A program made the translations under genes and the position numbers. From sequence record LR756502.1: a stretch of DNA of 64,000 nucleotides. The stretch is one strand, 5' to 3'. Below the pieces are notes generated by a model. That model was given only the letters and a program-made list of their open reading frames with translations. It made no database searches and was not told the DNA's origin. Shown here piece after piece: positions 41,452 to 59,868 of the stretch (the first letter of the stretch is position 1; every line of letters begins with the position of its first letter).

Positions 41452-43167
41452 ATGTCACACATTAGAATAGACAAACAAAAAGCAGTTAAGAAGTGGGGAC
41501 CTGTTCTTGAGAACATGGGAGTTACTGGCGACAGAATTGATTGGATGGCAGAATATGCTGAATTTCACCAAATCAATGAGAACGCATATGTAAACGCTTC
41601 TAACGTAGCAGGTATGGGTCAAGTTATTGCAGCTGGTCCATCAATATTACCAGGTGCTACAATTGGTACAAATTGGTCATCAACAGGAATCGCAGGTTCA
41701 GGTGATGTTGGTCAAAACCTTTTACCAGTAGCAATGAAAATCGCAGCTCAAACAATCGGTTTGGATTTAGTAGCTGTTAAGCCTTCTCCAGGACCAAAAA
41801 TTGACTTACTTTATATTGATTTTCAATATGATGATACTCAATTGGGTGCTAATGATGAGAGACCACAGGTTTTCAAATTAAACATGACAGAATTGTCAAC
41901 AGTTCAAATCGCTCTTAGAGCTTTTATGTCTGCTAACGGTATCGTTGAGTCTCAAGGTGGGATGAATGATAGAATCTGGGCTAACATAAACGGATCTTCA
42001 ACAATCTCTACTTTTACTACAACTGATCAAACAGCAAATAGTAAAGTTGGTACAGTTGAATTCTTAGGTTTCTCTCGTATCGATGGTTACCCAATGTTCA
42101 GAGCTTACAGACAGTTTAACACAGCTCACACAGCAGTTACAACTGGTTCTACTCTTTGGTCATTTGACGCAACTAGAAACACATTTAACCCAACACAATC
42201 TATGATTACTCAAGTAACAGCAATTGGTACAGTTTCTGTTAGTGGTGTAACTCTTGAGTTGGTATCAGCTCTTGAAGATCATATCCCGGGATTCTCTGCA
42301 AATTGGAACTCTAGTTCAACTGGATTTGCTGGTAACTATCCAATGGACAGATTACAAGATGACAGCACATATGCTGGTGTTATCGGACCAAAAATTTCTT
42401 CTAAATCTATTGCAGTTGGTACTATTGAAGTAACTTCAGCTCTTAGAAGATCAGAAATTGAAGATATCAAAGCTAACACAGGTATGGACATCGTTCAAAA
42501 GATGGAGTCAATCCTTGTTAATGAGTTATCTCAAACAATTTCTAAACAAATTGTAGCTAAGATTTTCGAAATGGGTGATCTAAACAGAACAACAGCTCCT
42601 TTATTTACTGGAACTGCTTTAGCTGGTGACCCAACTGGAAAAACTATCTTCGACTTAAACACTGTATATGCAGCAGTTGCAACAGGACCAGGAGGAGAAA
42701 CTACACACGCGATTCAACGTAAGTTGATCACTAAGATAGCTCACGCTTCTAACTACATTGCGACTGAAGGTCGTGTTGGTCCAGCTCAATACTTGATCAC
42801 AAATGGAGGTCTTGCAGCAGCTTTACAAGATATCGCTGGTTACACAGTTAACCCTATGAAATCTAAATTAAACTCACAAGGTCAATTATACCCTGTAGGT
42901 ACAATTGGAGATATCTCTATCTATGTTGATCCTTATATGAAGTATAATGACAACAGAATTGTTGTAGGAAGAAAGAACAACGCTGACCAACCTGGTATTA
43001 TTTTCGTACCTTATTTGATGGCTCAGTCTATCTCTGTAATCTCTGAAGCTACATTCGCACCACGTATGTTGTTAAGATCAAGATATGCAGTTGCTGAAGT
43101 TGGTTGGTTCCCACAAAAACAATTTATGACTATTAAAGTTGTAGATGCTAATGGTTACTTAAACTAA
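41452..43167 (+). CDS. gp23: Major capsid protein
   Basis: KKWGPVLE, HQINE cleavage-like site, DLVAVKPSPGP, IYVDPY, PGIIFVPY, FAPRMLLRSRYAV. Confidence 0.95.
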   Translation: MSHIRIDKQKAVKKWGPVLENMGVTGDRIDWMAEYAEFHQINENAYVNASNVAGMGQVIAAGPSILPGATIGTNWSSTGIAGSGDVGQNLLPVAMKIAAQTIGLDLVAVKPSPGPKIDLLYIDFQYDDTQLGANDERPQVFKLNMTELSTVQIALRAFMSANGIVESQGGMNDRIWANINGSSTISTFTTTDQTANSKVGTVEFLGFSRIDGYPMFRAYRQFNTAHTAVTTGSTLWSFDATRNTFNPTQSMITQVTAIGTVSVSGVTLELVSALEDHIPGFSANWNSSSTGFAGNYPMDRLQDDSTYAGVIGPKISSKSIAVGTIEVTSALRRSEIEDIKANTGMDIVQKMESILVNELSQTISKQIVAKIFEMGDLNRTTAPLFTGTALAGDPTGKTIFDLNTVYAAVATGPGGETTHAIQRKLITKIAHASNYIATEGRVGPAQYLITNGGLAAALQDIAGYTVNPMKSKLNSQGQLYPVGTIGDISIYVDPYMKYNDNRIVVGRKNNADQPGIIFVPYLMAQSISVISEATFAPRMLLRSRYAVAEVGWFPQKQFMTIKVVDANGYLN

Positions 43168-43252: not shown

Positions 43253-43942
43253 ATGAAAAAGTATATCCTAGTTGCTGATGATCCTAATTGTACTGATTTA
43301 TATCTTCAATATTTTGATGATCTAATAGGAGTATATCAATTTGTTTGTGACGATCTAACATATGATGACTTTGATATCGAAGATTTTATGGCTGGTGGTT
43401 CTACTGGATATAGCTGCGTTGAAGAAAGAATTCAAGAACATGAAGTTAGTTATAACCTATTTAAAAATGGTGAATCTGATTGCACTTTCATACTAAGTGG
43501 GGATGATGGATCTTGGGAAGAATTTACCAATATTTGTTTTGGTATTAAGGAGAATAAGATTATAAAATTTGATAAATTTAATGAGGGTAAGAAGGATAAA
43601 TTTCCAAATCTTAAAAAGCTAGAAATAGATGGATTTGTTGTGTATATTGGTAAGGATGCTATTTCAAATGATCATCTAACATTCAATATCGCCTATCCGG
43701 AAGATATTTGGATGCATGCTAAGGGTGTTCCTGGTAGTCATGTTGTTATAAGAGTAAGAGAAAATCTACCAACAAAAGAAACAATAAAAAAAGTGGCACA
43801 ACTAGCATTAAAAAATAGTAAGTCTAAGTCAGATAGAGCTTCAGTTGTCTATTGTCAAAGAAAATTTGTTAAAAAAGAAAAGGGTATGAATCCTGGTGAA
43901 GTTAGGGTTGATTATACCAATTCTGAGGAAATTGCTATTTGA
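43253..43942 (+). CDS. Acidic N-domain plus NFACT-R (DUF814, RqcH/FbpA C-terminal) domain
   Basis: YIGKDAISNDHLT...DIWMHAKGVPGSHVVI...LA...SK...PGEV. Confidence 0.82.
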   Translation: MKKYILVADDPNCTDLYLQYFDDLIGVYQFVCDDLTYDDFDIEDFMAGGSTGYSCVEERIQEHEVSYNLFKNGESDCTFILSGDDGSWEEFTNICFGIKENKIIKFDKFNEGKKDKFPNLKKLEIDGFVVYIGKDAISNDHLTFNIAYPEDIWMHAKGVPGSHVVIRVRENLPTKETIKKVAQLALKNSKSKSDRASVVYCQRKFVKKEKGMNPGEVRVDYTNSEEIAI

Positions 43943-45918: not shown

Positions 45919-45956
45919 AAACATTTTTGTTATTAAGTAATATAAGTGTATATTTG
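45919..45956 (+). promoter_or_regulatory. Tandem AAAC-N18-TATAAG and Bacteroidota TTTG-N19-TATATTTG promoters for tmRNA
   Basis: Read directly upstream of ssrA. Confidence 0.7.
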
Positions 45957-45978: not shown

Positions 45979-46357
45979 GGGGGTGTCATAGAATAGATTC
46001 GCAGAGTAAAGGTAGTTATGCAGGTATCGGGTGGTAAGATGTCCGATTAATAAATTATCATACAAACTTGTAAACGACAACGTTTCAGAAGTAGGAACCC
46101 GTGAAGACATAGTATCGGCTCTACAAAACAACATGATCTCTGTAGGAGATCTAGCAGTAGCTTAATCGCAACTCTACTAAATAAATTCTACAACTGATTC
46201 ACAACAGTAAAACAAGGTGAGATTTTTTGTTGTTATTTGTTTGAGTCTTTCAAAATCAAATAACTATTTTGTCCACTTAGAAAAATGGACTAAGCCTGTA
46301 AATGAATAGATACAATTAACTGAGGAAGACACCGGGGGCAGTGCCTGGTCACCTCCA
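45979..46357 (+). ncRNA. ssrA: tmRNA
   Basis: Acceptor stem GGGGGTG/CACCTCC with G3:U70 and discriminator A; T-arm ACCGGG-GGCAGTG-CCTGGT; tag ORF 46076..46165 ending LAVA*. Confidence 0.92.
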
Positions 46358-46363
46358 CAAAAG

Positions 46364-46427
46364 AAAAGCCATTTGCGCTAGGTTAAGCCACGTTTTAGGA
46401 GGCTTTTTTTCGGCAAATGGCTTTTTT
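46364..46427 (+). terminator. Nested hairpin terminator after tmRNA
   Basis: Outer AAAAGCCATTTGC/GCAAATGGCTTTT; inner AAGCC/GGCTT followed by a U-run. Confidence 0.75.
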
Positions 46428-46435
46428 AATTTTAA

Positions 46436-46717
46436 ATGGAAATCATCGTAAATTCTAGAAAAAAAAGAGAACCTATATCATTAATATTTGATTCAGAGGT
46501 TTATTTACCAAATGAGTTGCTTCGGTCGTTTGATGAGTTAATAGTTCTTAAAAAGATTACACAAGAGGTTTTAGAGTATCTTGGTTTAAATACTGAGAAA
46601 ATTAGTGGATTGAATCCAGGATTTAAAATAACAAAAGTGCTCGTTGATGATGATGAATATGTTAGAATAAAAACAATTGTTAAAAGAGATAATATAATAG
46701 AAAATATACTAAGATGA
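46436..46717 (+). CDS. Hypothetical protein with C-terminal RDNIIENIL motif
   Basis: Ends KRDNIIENILR. Confidence 0.55.
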   Translation: MEIIVNSRKKREPISLIFDSEVYLPNELLRSFDELIVLKKITQEVLEYLGLNTEKISGLNPGFKITKVLVDDDEYVRIKTIVKRDNIIENILR

Positions 46718-47175
46718 TAGATAAATTTGATGGTCGATTTAGATTTTTATCTAATTTCTACCCCTCTGAAATAGAGTACCAAGGAATAACTTACCCAACT
46801 AATGAGCACTATTACGTTGCTATGAAAATAAATGACATACAACTAATAAATGGTCAGATGTTAACTGTTAACGATGCTAGAGAGCTCGTTGCTTCTATTG
46901 AGAGTTCTGGTAAGGTTAAAAGATTTGGTAGGTCTATAAAGGTAAGAAAAGATTGGGATGATGTGAAGTTGAAGGTTATGGAGTATGGAGTTCGTCAAAA
47001 ATTTACAAAGCACAAAAATCTATCAGATCTATTGATATCAACTGGTGATGAACAACTTATTGAAGGCAATTGGTGGGGTGATATTTTTTGGGGTGTTTGT
47101 GATGGTAAAGGAGAAAATAATCTAGGTAAGATTCTAATGATGATCCGTGATGAAATCAGAGGAAAAAGAATATAA
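46714..47175 (+). CDS. NADAR/YbiA family hydrolase
   Basis: FLSNFYPS, EHYY.AMK, WDDVK..VM, LIEGNWWGDIFWG, G.N.LGKILM.IR. Confidence 0.92.
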   Translation: MIDKFDGRFRFLSNFYPSEIEYQGITYPTNEHYYVAMKINDIQLINGQMLTVNDARELVASIESSGKVKRFGRSIKVRKDWDDVKLKVMEYGVRQKFTKHKNLSDLLISTGDEQLIEGNWWGDIFWGVCDGKGENNLGKILMMIRDEIRGKRI

Positions 47176-57764: not shown

Positions 57765-58949
57765 ATGCGAATTAGACGAAAATTTCTTCAATTAACAAGT
57801 TGGACTTATCCTTATGGAACTGAGTATACACTTGAGAGTTACCTACCAAAAGGATTTCAAAGAGATGAAAATGAGAACTATTATATTGTAGTTGGTAATA
57901 ATCCAAGTACAATGTTTACTTGTCATTTAGATACAGCTTGTTCATATCAGGAAAAAGTAACACATGTACCCAGTGGTAATTTTATTAGAACTAATGGTAA
58001 GACAATTTTAGGATCTGATGATAAGGCTGGTATGACAGTTATGTTATATATGATTGAGAAAAAGGTTCCTGGTATATACTACTTCTTTACTGGTGAGGAA
58101 GTTGGATGTATTGGATCTGGTGATTTGGCAGATCAGTGGTTTGAGTTAAAAATGTTTAATGATATAACTAAAATTGTTTCTTTTGATAGAAGGGGTACTG
58201 GTTCTGTAATTACTCACCAATTATATGGTAGATGTTGTTCAAATGAGTTCGCTGAAGAACTATCAAAGAGATTAAACGATACTGATGAGGGCATTAATAT
58301 GTCTCCGGATAATACTGGTATAATGACAGATTCTGCTAAGTTTGTTGATATGGTTCCGGAGTGTACTAACATTTCAGTTGGATATTATAAAGAACATACT
58401 GTTGATGAGTGTCAAGATATTGAATTTTTGCAGAGGTTGTGTAAGGCTGTTGTTAAAATTGACTGGGAAACACTTCCGGTTAAGAGAGATCCGACCGAAG
58501 AAGAAGAGGAAAGTTATATAGATACTTATGCAAATTGGAGTAATGGAAAATATAAGTACTCAATAGATGAAGATGGATATGAGTTCTTGGAGGAAAACTA
58601 TACATATGTTCAGTATTCTACACCAACTGGTAAGGATGTAAAGAAAATGCTTATTTCAAAGGATAGAGTTTCTGAGGAAAAGAAATATATATACAACTGG
58701 GTATTCTCAACCGGGTTATATAGTGATATGACTGGTATGGATTGGAATGGTCATTCATTGTATATTGCAAATGCGAAAGGAAATCTTGAATTTGTTGGTA
58801 ATAGAGTTGAGCTTATGGATTATGTCCCTGAGTTAAAGACTGTTCCAACAAGATGTCTTTCTGATAAACCTAGGAAGCACGTTAAGGATATAGACACTGA
58901 AGTTACTGACATGAGTGATGATAGGTTTATGGAAGAGTATATGTATTAA
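57765..58949 (+). CDS. Second M20/M28-family metallopeptidase
   Basis: CHLDTA, LGSDDKAG, GEEVGCIGS, SFDRRG, TNISVGYYKEHT. Confidence 0.82.
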   Translation: MRIRRKFLQLTSWTYPYGTEYTLESYLPKGFQRDENENYYIVVGNNPSTMFTCHLDTACSYQEKVTHVPSGNFIRTNGKTILGSDDKAGMTVMLYMIEKKVPGIYYFFTGEEVGCIGSGDLADQWFELKMFNDITKIVSFDRRGTGSVITHQLYGRCCSNEFAEELSKRLNDTDEGINMSPDNTGIMTDSAKFVDMVPECTNISVGYYKEHTVDECQDIEFLQRLCKAVVKIDWETLPVKRDPTEEEEESYIDTYANWSNGKYKYSIDEDGYEFLEENYTYVQYSTPTGKDVKKMLISKDRVSEEKKYIYNWVFSTGLYSDMTGMDWNGHSLYIANAKGNLEFVGNRVELMDYVPELKTVPTRCLSDKPRKHVKDIDTEVTDMSDDRFMEEYMY

Positions 58950-58959
58950 ACCAAAAACT

Positions 58960-59868
58960 TTAATGTAATTTAGAACCTACGAAATCTTCGTAGGTTTCTT
59001 TTTTTACAACGTGAATGCAATCATCGATGGAGAATGAAAGCGAGAATCGATCAATGTCGTCATGAATAAAAACACCATCAGACCCATCTCCAAAGGAATT
59101 ATATGTACCAATAACAACTTTAATTAAAGAAGATCTCAGTGGTTGTACATCCGCGCGATCCAGCTTTAATATCTTGAGACTCTCACTGGTCACTAATACT
59201 ACTTTATCCTCATCTTCAAGACTATTTCTCTCATCTTTAATTTCATTTAATATTTGGAAGTTAACCTTGTCACTTTTTAGTGACTTAGCAATGGACGACA
59301 TATCCATATTTGTAATTACTTGATTAGTTGTTGTCTCTATTATATTCTTACTAGTATATTCATCCTTGTAGTCTTCTATTAGATCACATGTTGTGAAGTC
59401 AGCATCACCACTTACTGTCTTATATTTATGATGTAGGTCACCGAAAACCTTATCTATTGCATTCTCGTATGTTTTTCTAACTTCTTCCTCTATCTCAGTT
59501 GATATGTATAATAACCAATCTGGTGCATCATTAGAAGCCTTTTCTAAAACCTTTTCGGGCTCAGCAAAATCATTATATGTTTCTTTTTTAACTATATGGA
59601 AAGCATGTTCTATTGTATAAACAGTATCGTTAGTCGAAGTTCCTAATACATAACAATTATCATTTTGATCAAACCATCTTTCTAATTTAAATTGATATGT
59701 ATCATATCCACCGCTGAAATATGTAGCTAAAACTTCATCACCCTCCATAAGAGAATTTCTCTCATCATCTAATTTAGTAAGCACAGAAAGGTCAACCTCA
59801 TCATTTACGCACTTGAAGTCGTGTGATTGAACATATAGTTCATTGAACTGTTTCCACTTTTTGATCAT
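58960..59868 (-). CDS. Tandem-duplicated-domain protein with capsid-targeting-like N-terminus
   Basis: MIKKWKQFNE; DERNSL and H[IV]VKKETY.DF each occur twice. Confidence 0.6.
   Translation of the reverse strand: MIKKWKQFNELYVQSHDFKCVNDEVDLSVLTKLDDERNSLMEGDEVLATYFSGGYDTYQFKLERWFDQNDNCYVLGTSTNDTVYTIEHAFHIVKKETYNDFAEPEKVLEKASNDAPDWLLYISTEIEEEVRKTYENAIDKVFGDLHHKYKTVSGDADFTTCDLIEDYKDEYTSKNIIETTTNQVITNMDMSSIAKSLKSDKVNFQILNEIKDERNSLEDEDKVVLVTSESLKILKLDRADVQPLRSSLIKVVIGTYNSFGDGSDGVFIHDDIDRFSLSFSIDDCIHVVKKETYEDFVGSKLH
58972..59005 (+). terminator. Intrinsic terminator overlapping the 3' end of the opposite-strand gene
   Basis: AACCTACGAA-ATC-TTCGTAGGTT followed by a U-run. Confidence 0.75.

What the first reader, a model, noticed from the sequence alone, without database searches (positions are those of the whole stretch)
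45979..46360. tmRNA with an inferred 29-aa tag and a non-canonical T-arm
Seen: UAAAC-G resume context gives (A)DNVSEVGTREDIVSALQNNMISVGDLAVA* (46076-46165), about three times the E. coli tag. The T-arm has a 6-bp stem and a GGCAGUG loop instead of UUCRANY, and CCA is not encoded (ACAA). Inference: the long tag may add an adaptor site that reroutes tagged proteins. The resume codon is inferred.
Basis: partly seen in the sequence, partly recalled or inferred. Interest (0 to 1): 0.65.

Follow-up and report, generated by a model that had tools for sequence, protein, structure and literature searches.

The report
Hidden tmRNA of huge phages
A 642-kb phage genome carries its own ribosome-rescue RNA (tmRNA) with a rebuilt tRNA-like elbow and a 29-codon tag; it belongs to a widespread phage family that the standard tmRNA finders miss.

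Summary
Window 45979-46357 (+) is a one-piece tmRNA gene of the huge phage LR756502.1. ARAGORN and Rfam both miss it (0 genes; 8.6 bits against a cut-off of 47).

I found 53 distinct full-length homologues (67-84% identical) in related phage contigs. Compensatory changes support the acceptor stem, helix 2, PK1, PK2, PK4 and the T stem. G3:U70 and discriminator A are present in 54 of 54.

The tag frame is open for 27-29 codons in all 54, while the other two frames close early. All indels in it are multiples of three. The resume context UAAAY|GGN matches that of a canonical sister-phage tmRNA.

The T arm is non-canonical across the family: a 6-bp stem and a GGCAGUR loop. Its second and third loop bases co-vary with two D-loop bases, so the elbow seems kept with new bases. 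CCA is encoded in only 3 of 54.

The phage encodes a full SmpB, a CCA-adding-type enzyme, three ClpP homologues and a ClpC-like unfoldase. It has no Lon, ClpX, SspB, AlaRS or EF-Tu.

The idea that the tag reroutes proteins is untested. A 27-aa tag is already known in Mycoplasma. Verdict: a new variant of a known kind.

The parts
45926..45956 (+). Promoter-like element: TTTG (45926-45929), a 19-nt spacer, then TATATTTG (45949-45956), ending 22 nt before G1
   Evidence: Read. An exact TAnnTTTG lies 11-29 nt upstream of G1 in 33 of 54 family members, and TTTG lies 15-26 nt further upstream in 25. That this matches the Bacteroidetes -33/-7 promoter consensus is my own knowledge. The generic sigma-70 scan is no better than shuffles.
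45979..46357 (+). tmRNA (ssrA) gene, 379 nt from G1 to discriminator A; CCA must be added
45979..45985 (+). Acceptor stem, 5' strand GGGGGUG. It pairs with 46350-46356 (CACCUCC) and has G3:U70.
   Evidence: 7 of 7 pairs form in the window. G3:U70 and discriminator A occur in 54 of 54. Compensatory changes occur at pairs 5 and 6.
45986..45997 (+). D-loop analogue UCAUAGAAUAGA. A45990 and G45991 correspond to tRNA G18 and G19.
   Evidence: These two bases co-vary with T-loop bases 2 and 3. The first pair is A/G in 51 and G/U in 3. The second is G/C in 53 and A/U in 1. No other combination occurs. The canonical sister tmRNA has UGG here.
45998..46024 (+). Helix 2, 5' strand, in three segments. 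It pairs with 46295-46327.
   Evidence: 92.8-100% of cells pair. 14 of 21 pairs show changes on both sides.
46026..46063 (+). Pseudoknot 1: AUCGG 46026-46030 pairs with CCGAU 46043-46047; loop bases 46034-46037 pair with 46060-46063
   Evidence: Stem 1 is 100% paired and stem 2 is 89.8% paired, with all four pairs of stem 2 co-varying
46071..46075 (+). UAAAC, the sequence just upstream of the resume codon (-5 to -1)
   Evidence: UAAAY precedes the resume codon in 52 of 54; the exceptions are UAAGC and CAAAC. The same UAAAU|GGC AAC precedes the ARAGORN-called tag of sister phage LR756500.1.
46076..46165 (+). Tag reading frame: resume codon GAC, 29 codons (DNVSEVGTREDIVSALQNNMISVGDLAVA), stop TAA at 46163-46165
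   Evidence: The frame is open for 27-29 codons in 54 of 54. The other two frames close after 2-10 codons in nearly all, at the latest after 23. All indels are multiples of 3. Entropy by codon position is 19.0 / 16.5 / 25.1.
46093..46122 (+). Hairpin A inside the tag frame (46093-46095 with 46120-46122; 46099-46102 with 46115-46118)
   Evidence: 96-98% of cells pair; 5 of 7 pairs change on both sides
46135..46151 (+). Hairpin B inside the tag frame, GAUCUC/GAGAUC, in the position of helix 5 but ending 11 nt before the stop
   Evidence: 6 of 6 pairs form in the window. 83% of cells pair in the family, and 5 of 6 pairs change on both sides.
46193..46220 (+). Pseudoknot 2: ACUG 46193-46196 with CAGU 46205-46208; UCAC 46199-46202 with GUGA 46217-46220
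   Evidence: 89.8% and 98.6% of cells pair; 7 of 8 pairs co-vary
46221..46264 (+). Pseudoknot 3 (tentative): GAUUUU 46221-46226 with AAAAUC 46252-46257; GUUAUUU 46232-46238 with AAAUAAC 46258-46264
   Evidence: 13 of 13 pairs form in the window. On the family alignment only 37% and 65% of cells pair, because the region is gappy. After local re-alignment the second stem co-varies by eye. The first stem is uncertain.
46271..46294 (+). Pseudoknot 4: GUCCA 46271-46275 with UGGAC 46286-46290; CUUA 46276-46279 with UAAG 46291-46294
   Evidence: 91.5% and 88% of cells pair; all 5 pairs of stem 1 co-vary
46331..46349 (+). T arm: 6-bp stem ACCGGG/CCUGGU and 7-nt loop GGCAGUG (46337-46343)
   Evidence: 98.4% of cells pair. 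5 of 6 pairs change on both sides. 41 of 54 have exactly 6 bp plus 7 nt. GGCAGUR accounts for 29 of 54, and 34 of 54 if GGCGGUA is counted. None has UUC. The arm is 2 nt longer than in the canonical sister tmRNA.
46358..46360 (+). CAA in the place of CCA
   Evidence: Across the family: CAA 43, CUA 7, CCA 3. The phage encodes a PolyA_pol/CCA-adding-type nucleotidyltransferase at record 598559-598936, 104 bits.
46362..46427 (+). Terminator-like long hairpin ending in a U run
   Evidence: -27.6 kcal/mol, z = -4.6. Nearly every homologue has a GC-rich hairpin plus T run of unrelated sequence within about 40 nt of its 3' end.

Best explanation
This is a functional phage-encoded one-piece tmRNA (ssrA). 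It belongs to a family shared by huge phages related to LR756502.1, whose hosts are predicted to be Bacteroidetes.

Inferred pathway:
- It is its own transcription unit: a promoter-like element, a roughly 15-20-nt leader, 379 nt of RNA, and a terminator hairpin.
- The 5' end is cut to G1, and the 3' end is trimmed and given CCA. The phage has its own CCA-adding-type enzyme.
- Host AlaRS charges it through G3:U70 and A73, and host EF-Tu delivers it.
- It works together with the phage's own full-length SmpB.
- On stalled ribosomes, translation resumes at GAC 46076. It adds Ala plus 29 residues and stops at UAA.

The T arm is rebuilt, not broken. The stem has one extra base pair. In the loop GGCAGUR, C3 still pairs with the D-loop G. 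The usual G18-Psi55 contact appears replaced by A-G.

Shown here: gene anatomy, conservation, covariation, the conserved reading frame and the partner genes.

Inferred only: processing, charging, tagging and the fate of tagged proteins. My best guess for that fate is degradation through Clp proteases, possibly the phage's own ClpC-like/ClpP set.
For: Identity and context:
- The window equals LR756502.1, a 642,428-bp uncultured phage.
- The neighbours are a Gp23-type capsid protein and other phage genes.

Family and structure:
- 53 distinct full-length homologues were found in IMG/VR contigs and in LR745206.1.
- Structure counts: 89.4% of cells pair against 34-46% when slid; covariation is 0.342 against 0.05-0.11; 0 of 500 shuffles reach this.
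- RNAalifold on its own finds the acceptor stem, helix 2, the PK1 stem, a PK2 stem and the T stem.
- G3:U70 and discriminator A occur in 54 of 54.

Tag:
- The frame is open for 27-29 codons in all 54, while the other frames are closed.
- Indels are multiples of 3, and the third codon position is the most variable.
- The resume context UAAAY|GGN AA equals that of the ARAGORN-called tag of the canonical tmRNA of sister phage LR756500.1.

Elbow: D-loop and T-loop bases co-vary without exception.

Partner genes:
- The phage encodes SmpB (167 bits, with its C-terminal tail aligned to solved SmpBs) but has no other tmRNA above the Rfam cut-off.
- It has a CCA-adding-type enzyme.
- It has three ClpP homologues and a ClpC-like unfoldase with a VGF loop.

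Transcription unit and expression:
- Promoter-like and terminator elements are conserved in position but not in sequence.
- A 336-nt contig of a marine metatranscriptome lies wholly inside a relative's tmRNA.
Against: - No experiment exists, and the host is uncultured.
- ARAGORN and the Rfam model reject the gene.
- The T loop lacks the U54, U55 and A58 equivalents that canonical tmRNAs keep.
- The 7+6 bp acceptor/T helix is one pair longer than the 12 bp that EF-Tu, RNase P and CCA enzymes normally see (own knowledge). Use of host factors is therefore not assured, and the phage has no EF-Tu or AlaRS of its own.
- The tertiary covariation rests on only about two independent events.
- The RNA-library contig could come from contaminating DNA, and it derives from a relative, not from this phage.
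Confidence: 0.8

Rival explanations
1. The RNA is a tmRNA, but translation resumes further downstream, so the real tag is of ordinary length. The upstream part of the frame would then be conserved only as RNA structure.
For: Hairpin A (46093-46122) lies inside the frame and shows compensatory changes that alter amino acids, for example TR..AA to SK..FA. Its loop, GAAGAUUUAGUA, is almost invariant at nucleotide level. No tool can place a resume codon.
Against: - The frame is kept from the first codon in all 54 sequences.
- A 3-nt deletion at codon 3 (L037) and one at codon 18 (L069) keep the frame.
- First-position changes in the hairpin loop are conservative (L/I/V/M at codon 12).
- The UAAAY|GGN AA context is shared with an ARAGORN-annotated canonical relative.
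- It lies about 12 nt after PK1, as in E. coli (own knowledge).
- Sister phages LR756504.1 and LR756501.1 also have 24- and 27-29-codon frames.
Confidence: 0.08
2. The RNA acts mainly as a decoy or competitor that shuts down or replaces host trans-translation. It could do so by titrating host SmpB, AlaRS or ribosomes, rather than as a productive tagging template. The TLD-only tmRNA of mycobacteriophage DS6A is the model.
For: The T loop is altered and the acceptor/T helix is longer, which could impair normal function. The DS6A TLD-only RNA inhibits tmRNA in E. coli (PMC4131195, PMC11915505).
Against: A decoy would not need PK1, PK2 and PK4, a conserved resume context, a 27-29-codon open frame with a stop, or a phage SmpB with an intact C-terminal tail. 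All of these are kept.
Confidence: 0.07
3. It is a decaying tmRNA pseudogene, or another structured RNA that only resembles a tmRNA.
For: Both standard detectors fail. The T loop is non-canonical.
Against: At 67-84% identity there are compensatory changes in every major helix. The alanine identity elements are invariant, the frame is conserved, and each member has its own promoter-like element and terminator. Features align column by column with Rfam-positive sister tmRNAs: the 5' TLD, the GAC before the T stem, and the resume context.
Confidence: 0.03

Closest known systems
Standard one-piece bacterial tmRNA (Rfam RF00023, e.g. E. coli SsrA)
   Same: 7-bp acceptor stem with G3:U70 and discriminator A. 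A D-loop analogue without a D stem. Long helix 2. PK1 about 12 nt before the resume codon. A UA-containing -5/-4 context. A tag frame without a start codon. Pseudoknots after the frame. GAC before the T stem. A length of 379 nt. A dedicated SmpB partner.
   Different: The T stem has 6 bp, not 5. The T loop is GGCAGUR, not UUCRANY. The first D-loop G is an A. The tag has 29 codons (the most frequent length is 10, PMC11915505) and contains two co-varying hairpins. The last hairpin ends before the stop instead of enclosing it. It scores 8.6 bits against a cut-off of 47.
tmRNAs of sister huge phages: LR756500.1 (95.5 bits), LR756504.1 (65 bits), LR756501.1 (intron form)
   Same: Same phage clade by capsid protein, at 36-51% identity. 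Same UAAAU|GGC AAC or UAAAU|GAC AAC resume context. LR756504.1 and LR756501.1 also have long tag frames of 24 and 27-29 codons.
   Different: LR756500.1 has a canonical UGG D loop, a UUCAAAC T loop and a 10-aa tag, and that phage has no SmpB. LR756501.1 has the strands of a canonical-looking T arm interrupted by a group I intron. LR756504.1 has yet another deviant T loop. All three genes lie elsewhere in their genomes, not next to the capsid gene.
Mycoplasma/Mesoplasma tmRNA with a 27-aa tag recognised by Lon
   Same: An unusually long tag of 27 aa, which is thought to have shifted protease specificity (PMC8403727, citing Gur and Sauer 2008).
   Different: There is no sequence similarity between the tags. 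No Lon is encoded by the phage. The Mycoplasma T arm is not reported as deviant (own knowledge).
Previously listed phage tmRNAs (mycobacteriophages Bxz1, Catera and others; Bacillus phage G; DS6A TLD-only)
   Same: Phage-borne ssrA genes (PMC4131195). Huge phages were reported to carry tmRNA and SmpB (PMC7162821).
   Different: Those were found with the standard tools. The source paper of this genome assigned tmRNAs with ARAGORN only (PMC7162821), and ARAGORN misses this gene and all 53 relatives.

Membership tests
tmRNA (ssrA), standard one-piece form | tRNA-like acceptor stem of 7 bp with G3:U70 and discriminator A (alanine identity) | tested here: met
   7 of 7 pairs form in the window. G3:U70 and A73 occur in 54 of 54. 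Compensatory changes occur at pairs 5 and 6.
tmRNA (ssrA), standard one-piece form | T arm with a 5-bp stem and a canonical T-Psi-C loop (UUCRANY) | tested here: not met
   The stem has 6 bp and the loop is GGCAGUG. No family member has UUC. The arm itself is real: 98.4% of cells pair and 5 of 6 pairs co-vary.
tmRNA (ssrA), standard one-piece form | D-loop/T-loop tertiary contacts that form the elbow | tested here: inconclusive
   Two D-loop/T-loop column pairs co-vary without exception, but this rests on only about two independent events.
tmRNA (ssrA), standard one-piece form | Long helix 2 joining the tRNA-like domain to the pseudoknot ring | tested here: met
   21 pairs, 92.8-100% of cells paired, 14 pairs with changes on both sides
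tmRNA (ssrA), standard one-piece form | PK1 just upstream of the resume codon | tested here: met
   Both stems are supported, at 100% and 89.8%. About 12 nt separate PK1 from the resume codon.
tmRNA (ssrA), standard one-piece form | Internal tag frame without a start codon, ending at an in-frame stop, with a hydrophobic or Ala C-terminus | tested here: met
   27-29 codons in 54 of 54. The last residue is A or V in 53 of 54. The other frames are closed.
tmRNA (ssrA), standard one-piece form | Pseudoknots PK2-PK4 after the tag frame | tested here: inconclusive
   PK2 and PK4 are supported by covariation. PK3 forms in the window but counts poorly on the gappy family alignment.
tmRNA (ssrA), standard one-piece form | Score at or above the Rfam RF00023 gathering threshold, or an ARAGORN call | tested here: not met
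   8.6 bits against 47. ARAGORN finds 0 genes in the window and in 53 relatives. Rfam finds nothing in 8 of 8 relatives tested.
tmRNA (ssrA), standard one-piece form | A cognate SmpB in the same genome | tested here: met
   Record 367597-368013, 167 bits, 145 aa, with its C-terminal tail aligned to solved SmpBs
tmRNA (ssrA), standard one-piece form | Alanylation, ribosome entry and tagging of non-stop products | not testable with these tools
   This needs biochemistry or mass spectrometry.
Long-tag, Lon-directed tmRNA (Mycoplasma type) | A tag recognised by Lon, in an organism that relies on Lon and lacks ClpXP | tested here: not met
   The phage has no Lon. ClpP homologues and a ClpC-like unfoldase are present. 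Host proteases are unknown.

The most novel reading that the evidence does not exclude
The phage runs a semi-private trans-translation module. The tmRNA has a re-coded elbow (A-G in place of G18-Psi55, a G/G in place of T54-A58, and a 13-bp acceptor/T helix) that is matched to the phage SmpB. Its conserved 27-29-residue tag would be a degron for the phage's own ClpC-like/ClpP protease, or another phage-chosen fate, instead of the host's ClpXP route. The changed T loop might also remove the target site of the group I introns that invade tmRNA T loops; one such intron sits in the 735-kb sister phage.
Probability: 0.15. Interest if true: 0.75.

Novelty: new variant of a known kind. Interest (0 to 1): 0.55.

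Why it matters
- It fills a gap. These huge phages were known to carry SmpB. Here the matching tmRNA escapes ARAGORN, the only tool the source paper used, and also the current Rfam model. This holds for the window and for all 53 relatives tested with ARAGORN.
- It is a natural experiment on the part of tmRNA usually thought to be most constrained. The T-Psi-C loop is replaced and the T stem lengthened, while the alanine identity elements, the pseudoknots and the reading frame are kept. The D-loop seems to have changed in step.
- That gives testable predictions about which elbow contacts SmpB, EF-Tu, RNase P and the ribosome really need.
- The alignment made here could seed a covariance model to annotate this family in viral metagenomes.
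- The long, internally conserved tag together with phage Clp genes offers a concrete hypothesis about how a huge phage handles stalled ribosomes during infection.

Tried and rejected
- **ARAGORN rescue test.** In a script I swapped in a canonical 5-bp or 6-bp T arm, CCA and a GG D loop. ARAGORN still called nothing at default settings. At very low thresholds it gave only spurious 'permuted' calls. ARAGORN therefore cannot arbitrate the tag, and the T arm is not the only reason it fails.
- **Alternative short tag.** One of those spurious calls was UAAUC|GCA..., reading ATLLNKFYN just after the stop. I rejected it because that stretch is not conserved and its indels are not multiples of three.
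- **Whole-genome search of the window's own assembly.** None is held. I used the public record through locus handles instead.
- **Link between the NFACT-R protein (43253-43942) and the tmRNA.** It is present only in the two phage records with this tmRNA type. At least 8 relatives have the tmRNA without it, so it is synteny at best.
- **Genes sought in the phage and not found.** Lon, ClpX, SspB, AlaRS and EF-Tu.
- **PK3.** My drawn stems count poorly on the family alignment. I keep it as tentative.
- **Generic scans.** The sigma-70 promoter scan is no better than shuffles. The terminator scan missed the long hairpin downstream, and its single hit is hairpin B read on the minus strand.
- **Metatranscriptome runs X15 and X16.** Nothing was laid.
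- **Not run.** No full covariance model was built: the alignment has 405 columns, over the 400-column limit, and calibration would be too slow. No complex prediction of the tag with a protease was run, because the tag has 29 residues (under the 30-residue minimum) and I make no binding claim.

Full report
**What the window is.** The region is 100% identical to LR756502.1, an uncultured phage genome of 642,428 bp. Window position 1 is record position 186001. The source paper describes this as one of the four largest curated phage genomes. It places it in the 'Mahaphage' clade, with Bacteroidetes as predicted hosts (PMC7162821).

Genes around the finding are phage genes:
- a prohead-protease-like protein
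- a Gp23-type major capsid protein (41452-43167)
- an NFACT-R-domain protein (43253-43942)
- two proteins of unknown function
- after the RNA, a NADAR protein (46714-47175) and a Dam-type methylase

G+C is about 31% throughout.

**Checking the observation.**
- GGGGGUG (45979-45985) pairs with CACCUCC (46350-46356), with G3:U70.
- A46357 is the discriminator, and CAA follows instead of CCA.
- The T arm is ACCGGG-GGCAGUG-CCUGGU (46331-46349).
- After UAAAC, a frame of 29 codons runs from GAC 46076 to UAA 46163-46165.

ARAGORN reports no gene in the window. Rfam reports nothing at gathering score. In permissive mode the tmRNA model gives only 8.6 bits, on 46334-46360. So the case had to be made by comparative analysis.

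**Relatives.** Three searches brought in more than 100 loci:
- a blastn search of phage records found one relative, LR745206.1, at 75% identity
- a pattern from PK1 found 34 IMG/VR contigs
- the capsid protein found 261, of which 80 were fetched

From these I extracted 53 distinct full-length homologues, 67-84% identical to the window RNA, and aligned them (A2).

None of the 53 loci gives an ARAGORN call. None of 8 tested gives an Rfam hit.

A scan of one genome per prokaryote species with the T-arm pattern found a single hit. It is a 3.6-kb contig binned into a Peribacteria MAG, and it carries a full homologue. This T-arm pattern therefore looks essentially phage-borne.

**Secondary structure.** RNAalifold on its own recovers the acceptor stem, a long helix 2, the first PK1 stem, a PK2 stem and the T stem. 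30 of its 47 pairs have compensatory changes.

I then drew the full tmRNA layout with pseudoknots and counted it.
- Over 86 pairs, 89.4% of cells pair, against 34-46% when the partners are slid by 1-3 columns.
- The covariation score is 0.342 against 0.05-0.11, and 0 of 500 shuffles reach it.
- Well supported: acceptor stem, three segments of helix 2, both stems of PK1, both stems of PK2, both stems of PK4, and the T stem (5 of 6 pairs change on both sides).
- PK3 forms perfectly in the window but counts poorly on the gappy alignment. After local re-alignment its second stem co-varies by eye. I keep it as tentative.

G3:U70 and discriminator A are present in 54 of 54. The anatomy is that of a standard one-piece tmRNA.

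**The tag.**
- From the column of the window's GAC, the frame is open for 27-29 codons in all 54 sequences. The other two frames close after 2-10 codons in nearly all.
- Every indel inside the frame is a multiple of three, unlike those outside it.
- Summed entropy by codon position is 19.0 / 16.5 / 25.1.
- The resume codon is GGC in 41, GGA in 12, and GAC only in the window.
- The preceding bases are UAAAY in 52 of 54.
- The canonical tmRNA of sister phage LR756500.1 scores 95.5 bits in Rfam, and ARAGORN reads its tag as GNNAEMRMAA. That tag starts at UAAAU|GGC AAC, the same context.
The placement is still an inference.

The tag consensus is G-(N/K)-(V/T)-N-E-V-G-T-R-E-D-L-V-A-A-L-Q-N-N-M-I-L-V-E-D-L-A-T-V. 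The core NEVGTREDLVAALQNN is the most conserved part. The C-terminus varies and keeps only A or V as last residue (53 of 54).

Two hairpins lie inside the frame (46093-46122 and 46135-46151), and both show compensatory changes. RNA structure and coding therefore constrain this stretch together. That weakens any reading of the conserved core as purely a protein signal.

Sister phages LR756504.1 and LR756501.1 also have long frames, of 24 and 27-29 codons.

Long tags have a precedent. The Mycoplasma tag has 27 residues and is thought to be adapted to Lon (PMC8403727). The most frequent tag length in the 2025 tmRNA database is 10 (PMC11915505).

**The T arm.**
- Aligned with the canonical sister tmRNA, both arms follow a conserved GAC and abut the acceptor strand, but the window's arm is 2 nt longer.
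- 41 of 54 members have exactly 6 bp plus a 7-nt loop.
- The loop is GGCAGUA in 20, GGCAGUG in 9 and GGCGGUA in 5; the rest are near variants. None has UUC.

The most informative result concerns the elbow.
- The D-loop analogue reads UAG where the canonical relative reads UGG.
- The D-loop A pairs off with loop base 2: A/G in 51 sequences and G/U in 3.
- The D-loop G pairs off with loop base 3: G/C in 53 and A/U in 1.
- No other combination occurs.
- These are the positions of tRNA G18-Psi55 and G19-C56 (own knowledge). The elbow contact therefore seems kept, with A-G in place of G-Psi.
- Loop bases 1 and 5, the T54/A58 positions, are G/G in most. The exceptions are U/A, C/A, A/U and A/G.
- The caveat is that only about two independent events underlie the D/T covariation.

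A 7+6-bp acceptor/T helix is one pair longer than the usual 12 bp (own knowledge). Whether host EF-Tu, RNase P and the CCA enzyme accept it is untested.

**Partners in the phage genome.**
- The record encodes a 145-aa SmpB (167 bits). It aligns over its whole length, including the C-terminal tail, with solved SmpBs; the best is 7ljp at 1e-34.
- The Rfam model finds no other tmRNA above cut-off in this record or in LR745206.1. The weak hits there are tRNA genes.
- There is a PolyA_pol/CCA-adding-type enzyme. This fits CCA being encoded in only 3 of 54 family members.
- There are three ClpP homologues (260, 234 and 94 bits). The third lies about 2.6 kb from smpB.
- There is a 707-aa two-ring Clp/Hsp100 unfoldase. 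It has a UVR motif, no N domain and a VGF loop. I read this as ClpC-like and ClpP-docking, from my own knowledge.
- Lon, ClpX, SspB, AlaRS and EF-Tu were not found.

**Transcription unit and expression.**
- Upstream lie TTTG, 19 nt, then TATATTTG, ending 22 nt before G1.
- An exact TAnnTTTG sits 11-29 nt upstream in 33 of 54 members. It resembles the Bacteroidetes -33/-7 promoter (own knowledge).
- Downstream, the window has a long hairpin with a U run (z = -4.6). Nearly all relatives have a GC-rich hairpin plus T run of unrelated sequence.
- In one marine metatranscriptome, a 336-nt contig of a relative (about 84% alike) lies entirely within the tmRNA, from position 9 to just before the T arm.
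- In another, a 184-nt contig ends in the T arm.
- Contigs cannot prove ends, and DNA carry-over is possible. This is only a hint of expression.

**Interpretation.** The best explanation is a functional phage tmRNA that works with the phage SmpB and host AlaRS, EF-Tu and ribosomes. It would add Ala plus 29 residues to stalled chains.

The rivals are a later resume codon, a decoy role and a pseudogene. Each is disfavoured by the conserved frame, the pseudoknots and the intact SmpB. Only experiments can exclude the first two.

The conservation pattern and the phage Clp genes make a phage-directed fate plausible. No adaptor was found, and no binding was tested.

**Novelty.** Phage tmRNAs and long tags are both known. 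Three things are new here:
- a large, coherent phage family whose tmRNA has a rebuilt T arm and D loop
- its invisibility to ARAGORN and Rfam
- its pairing with phage SmpB and Clp genes

I rate it a new variant of a known kind, of moderate interest to RNA and phage specialists.

Noticed in passing
L011:1272-1503 (-), i.e. LR756501.1 about 718159-718390: The tmRNA gene of the 735-kb sister phage is interrupted by a group I intron (Rfam RF00028, 96 bits). The intron lies between the T-stem strands CAGGG and CCCUG. The acceptor GGGCUCG/CGGGUCC with G3:U70 is intact. The exact splice junctions were not determined.
   Followed up: partly
window 43253-43942 (+): A 229-aa protein with an NFACT-R_1 RNA-binding domain, a domain otherwise known from ribosome quality-control factors. 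It sits between the capsid gene and the tmRNA. It occurs only in the two phage records with this tmRNA type, but at least 8 relatives have the tmRNA without it.
   Followed up: partly
LR756502.1 440544-442667 (L141:45-2168) and 58622-59143, 112104-112634, 364599-365000: The phage encodes a ClpC-like two-ring AAA+ unfoldase (707 aa, UVR motif, VGF loop, no N domain) and three ClpP homologues. The third ClpP lies in a cluster with a sigma factor, a thioredoxin and SmpB.
   Followed up: partly
window 46714-47175 (+): A NADAR-domain protein follows the tmRNA here and in most relatives. The order capsid, NFACT-R, 458-aa protein, 172-aa protein, tmRNA, NADAR is widely conserved.
   Followed up: partly
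L140 (CAZKEK010000113.1, 3624 bp): The only hit to the T-arm pattern among 185,579 species genomes is a short contig binned into a Candidatus Peribacteria MAG. It carries a full homologue of this phage tmRNA (71% identity) and is probably a mis-binned phage contig.
   Followed up: partly
upstream of the tmRNA in most relatives (e.g. L054, L001, L046; window 45926-45956): A conserved promoter-like block, TTTTTTGA, about 10 nt, AATATTATATATA, two variable bases, then TTTG. It is shared even where flanking sequence differs, and may be a promoter class of these phages.
   Followed up: no
LR756500.1 (W05): The sister phage with the fully canonical tmRNA (95.5 bits, 10-aa tag) has no SmpB gene. The four records with long-tag tmRNAs (deviant T loop or intron-bearing) all have one.
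   Followed up: no
L009 (LR756502.1 372349-375432) and L010: tRNA gene clusters lie a few kb from smpB. They include 82-89-nt tRNA-Lys calls, and ARAGORN reports an odd tRNA with a 2-base anticodon in LR745206.1 and one with a 4-base anticodon (tcta) in LR756504.1.
   Followed up: no
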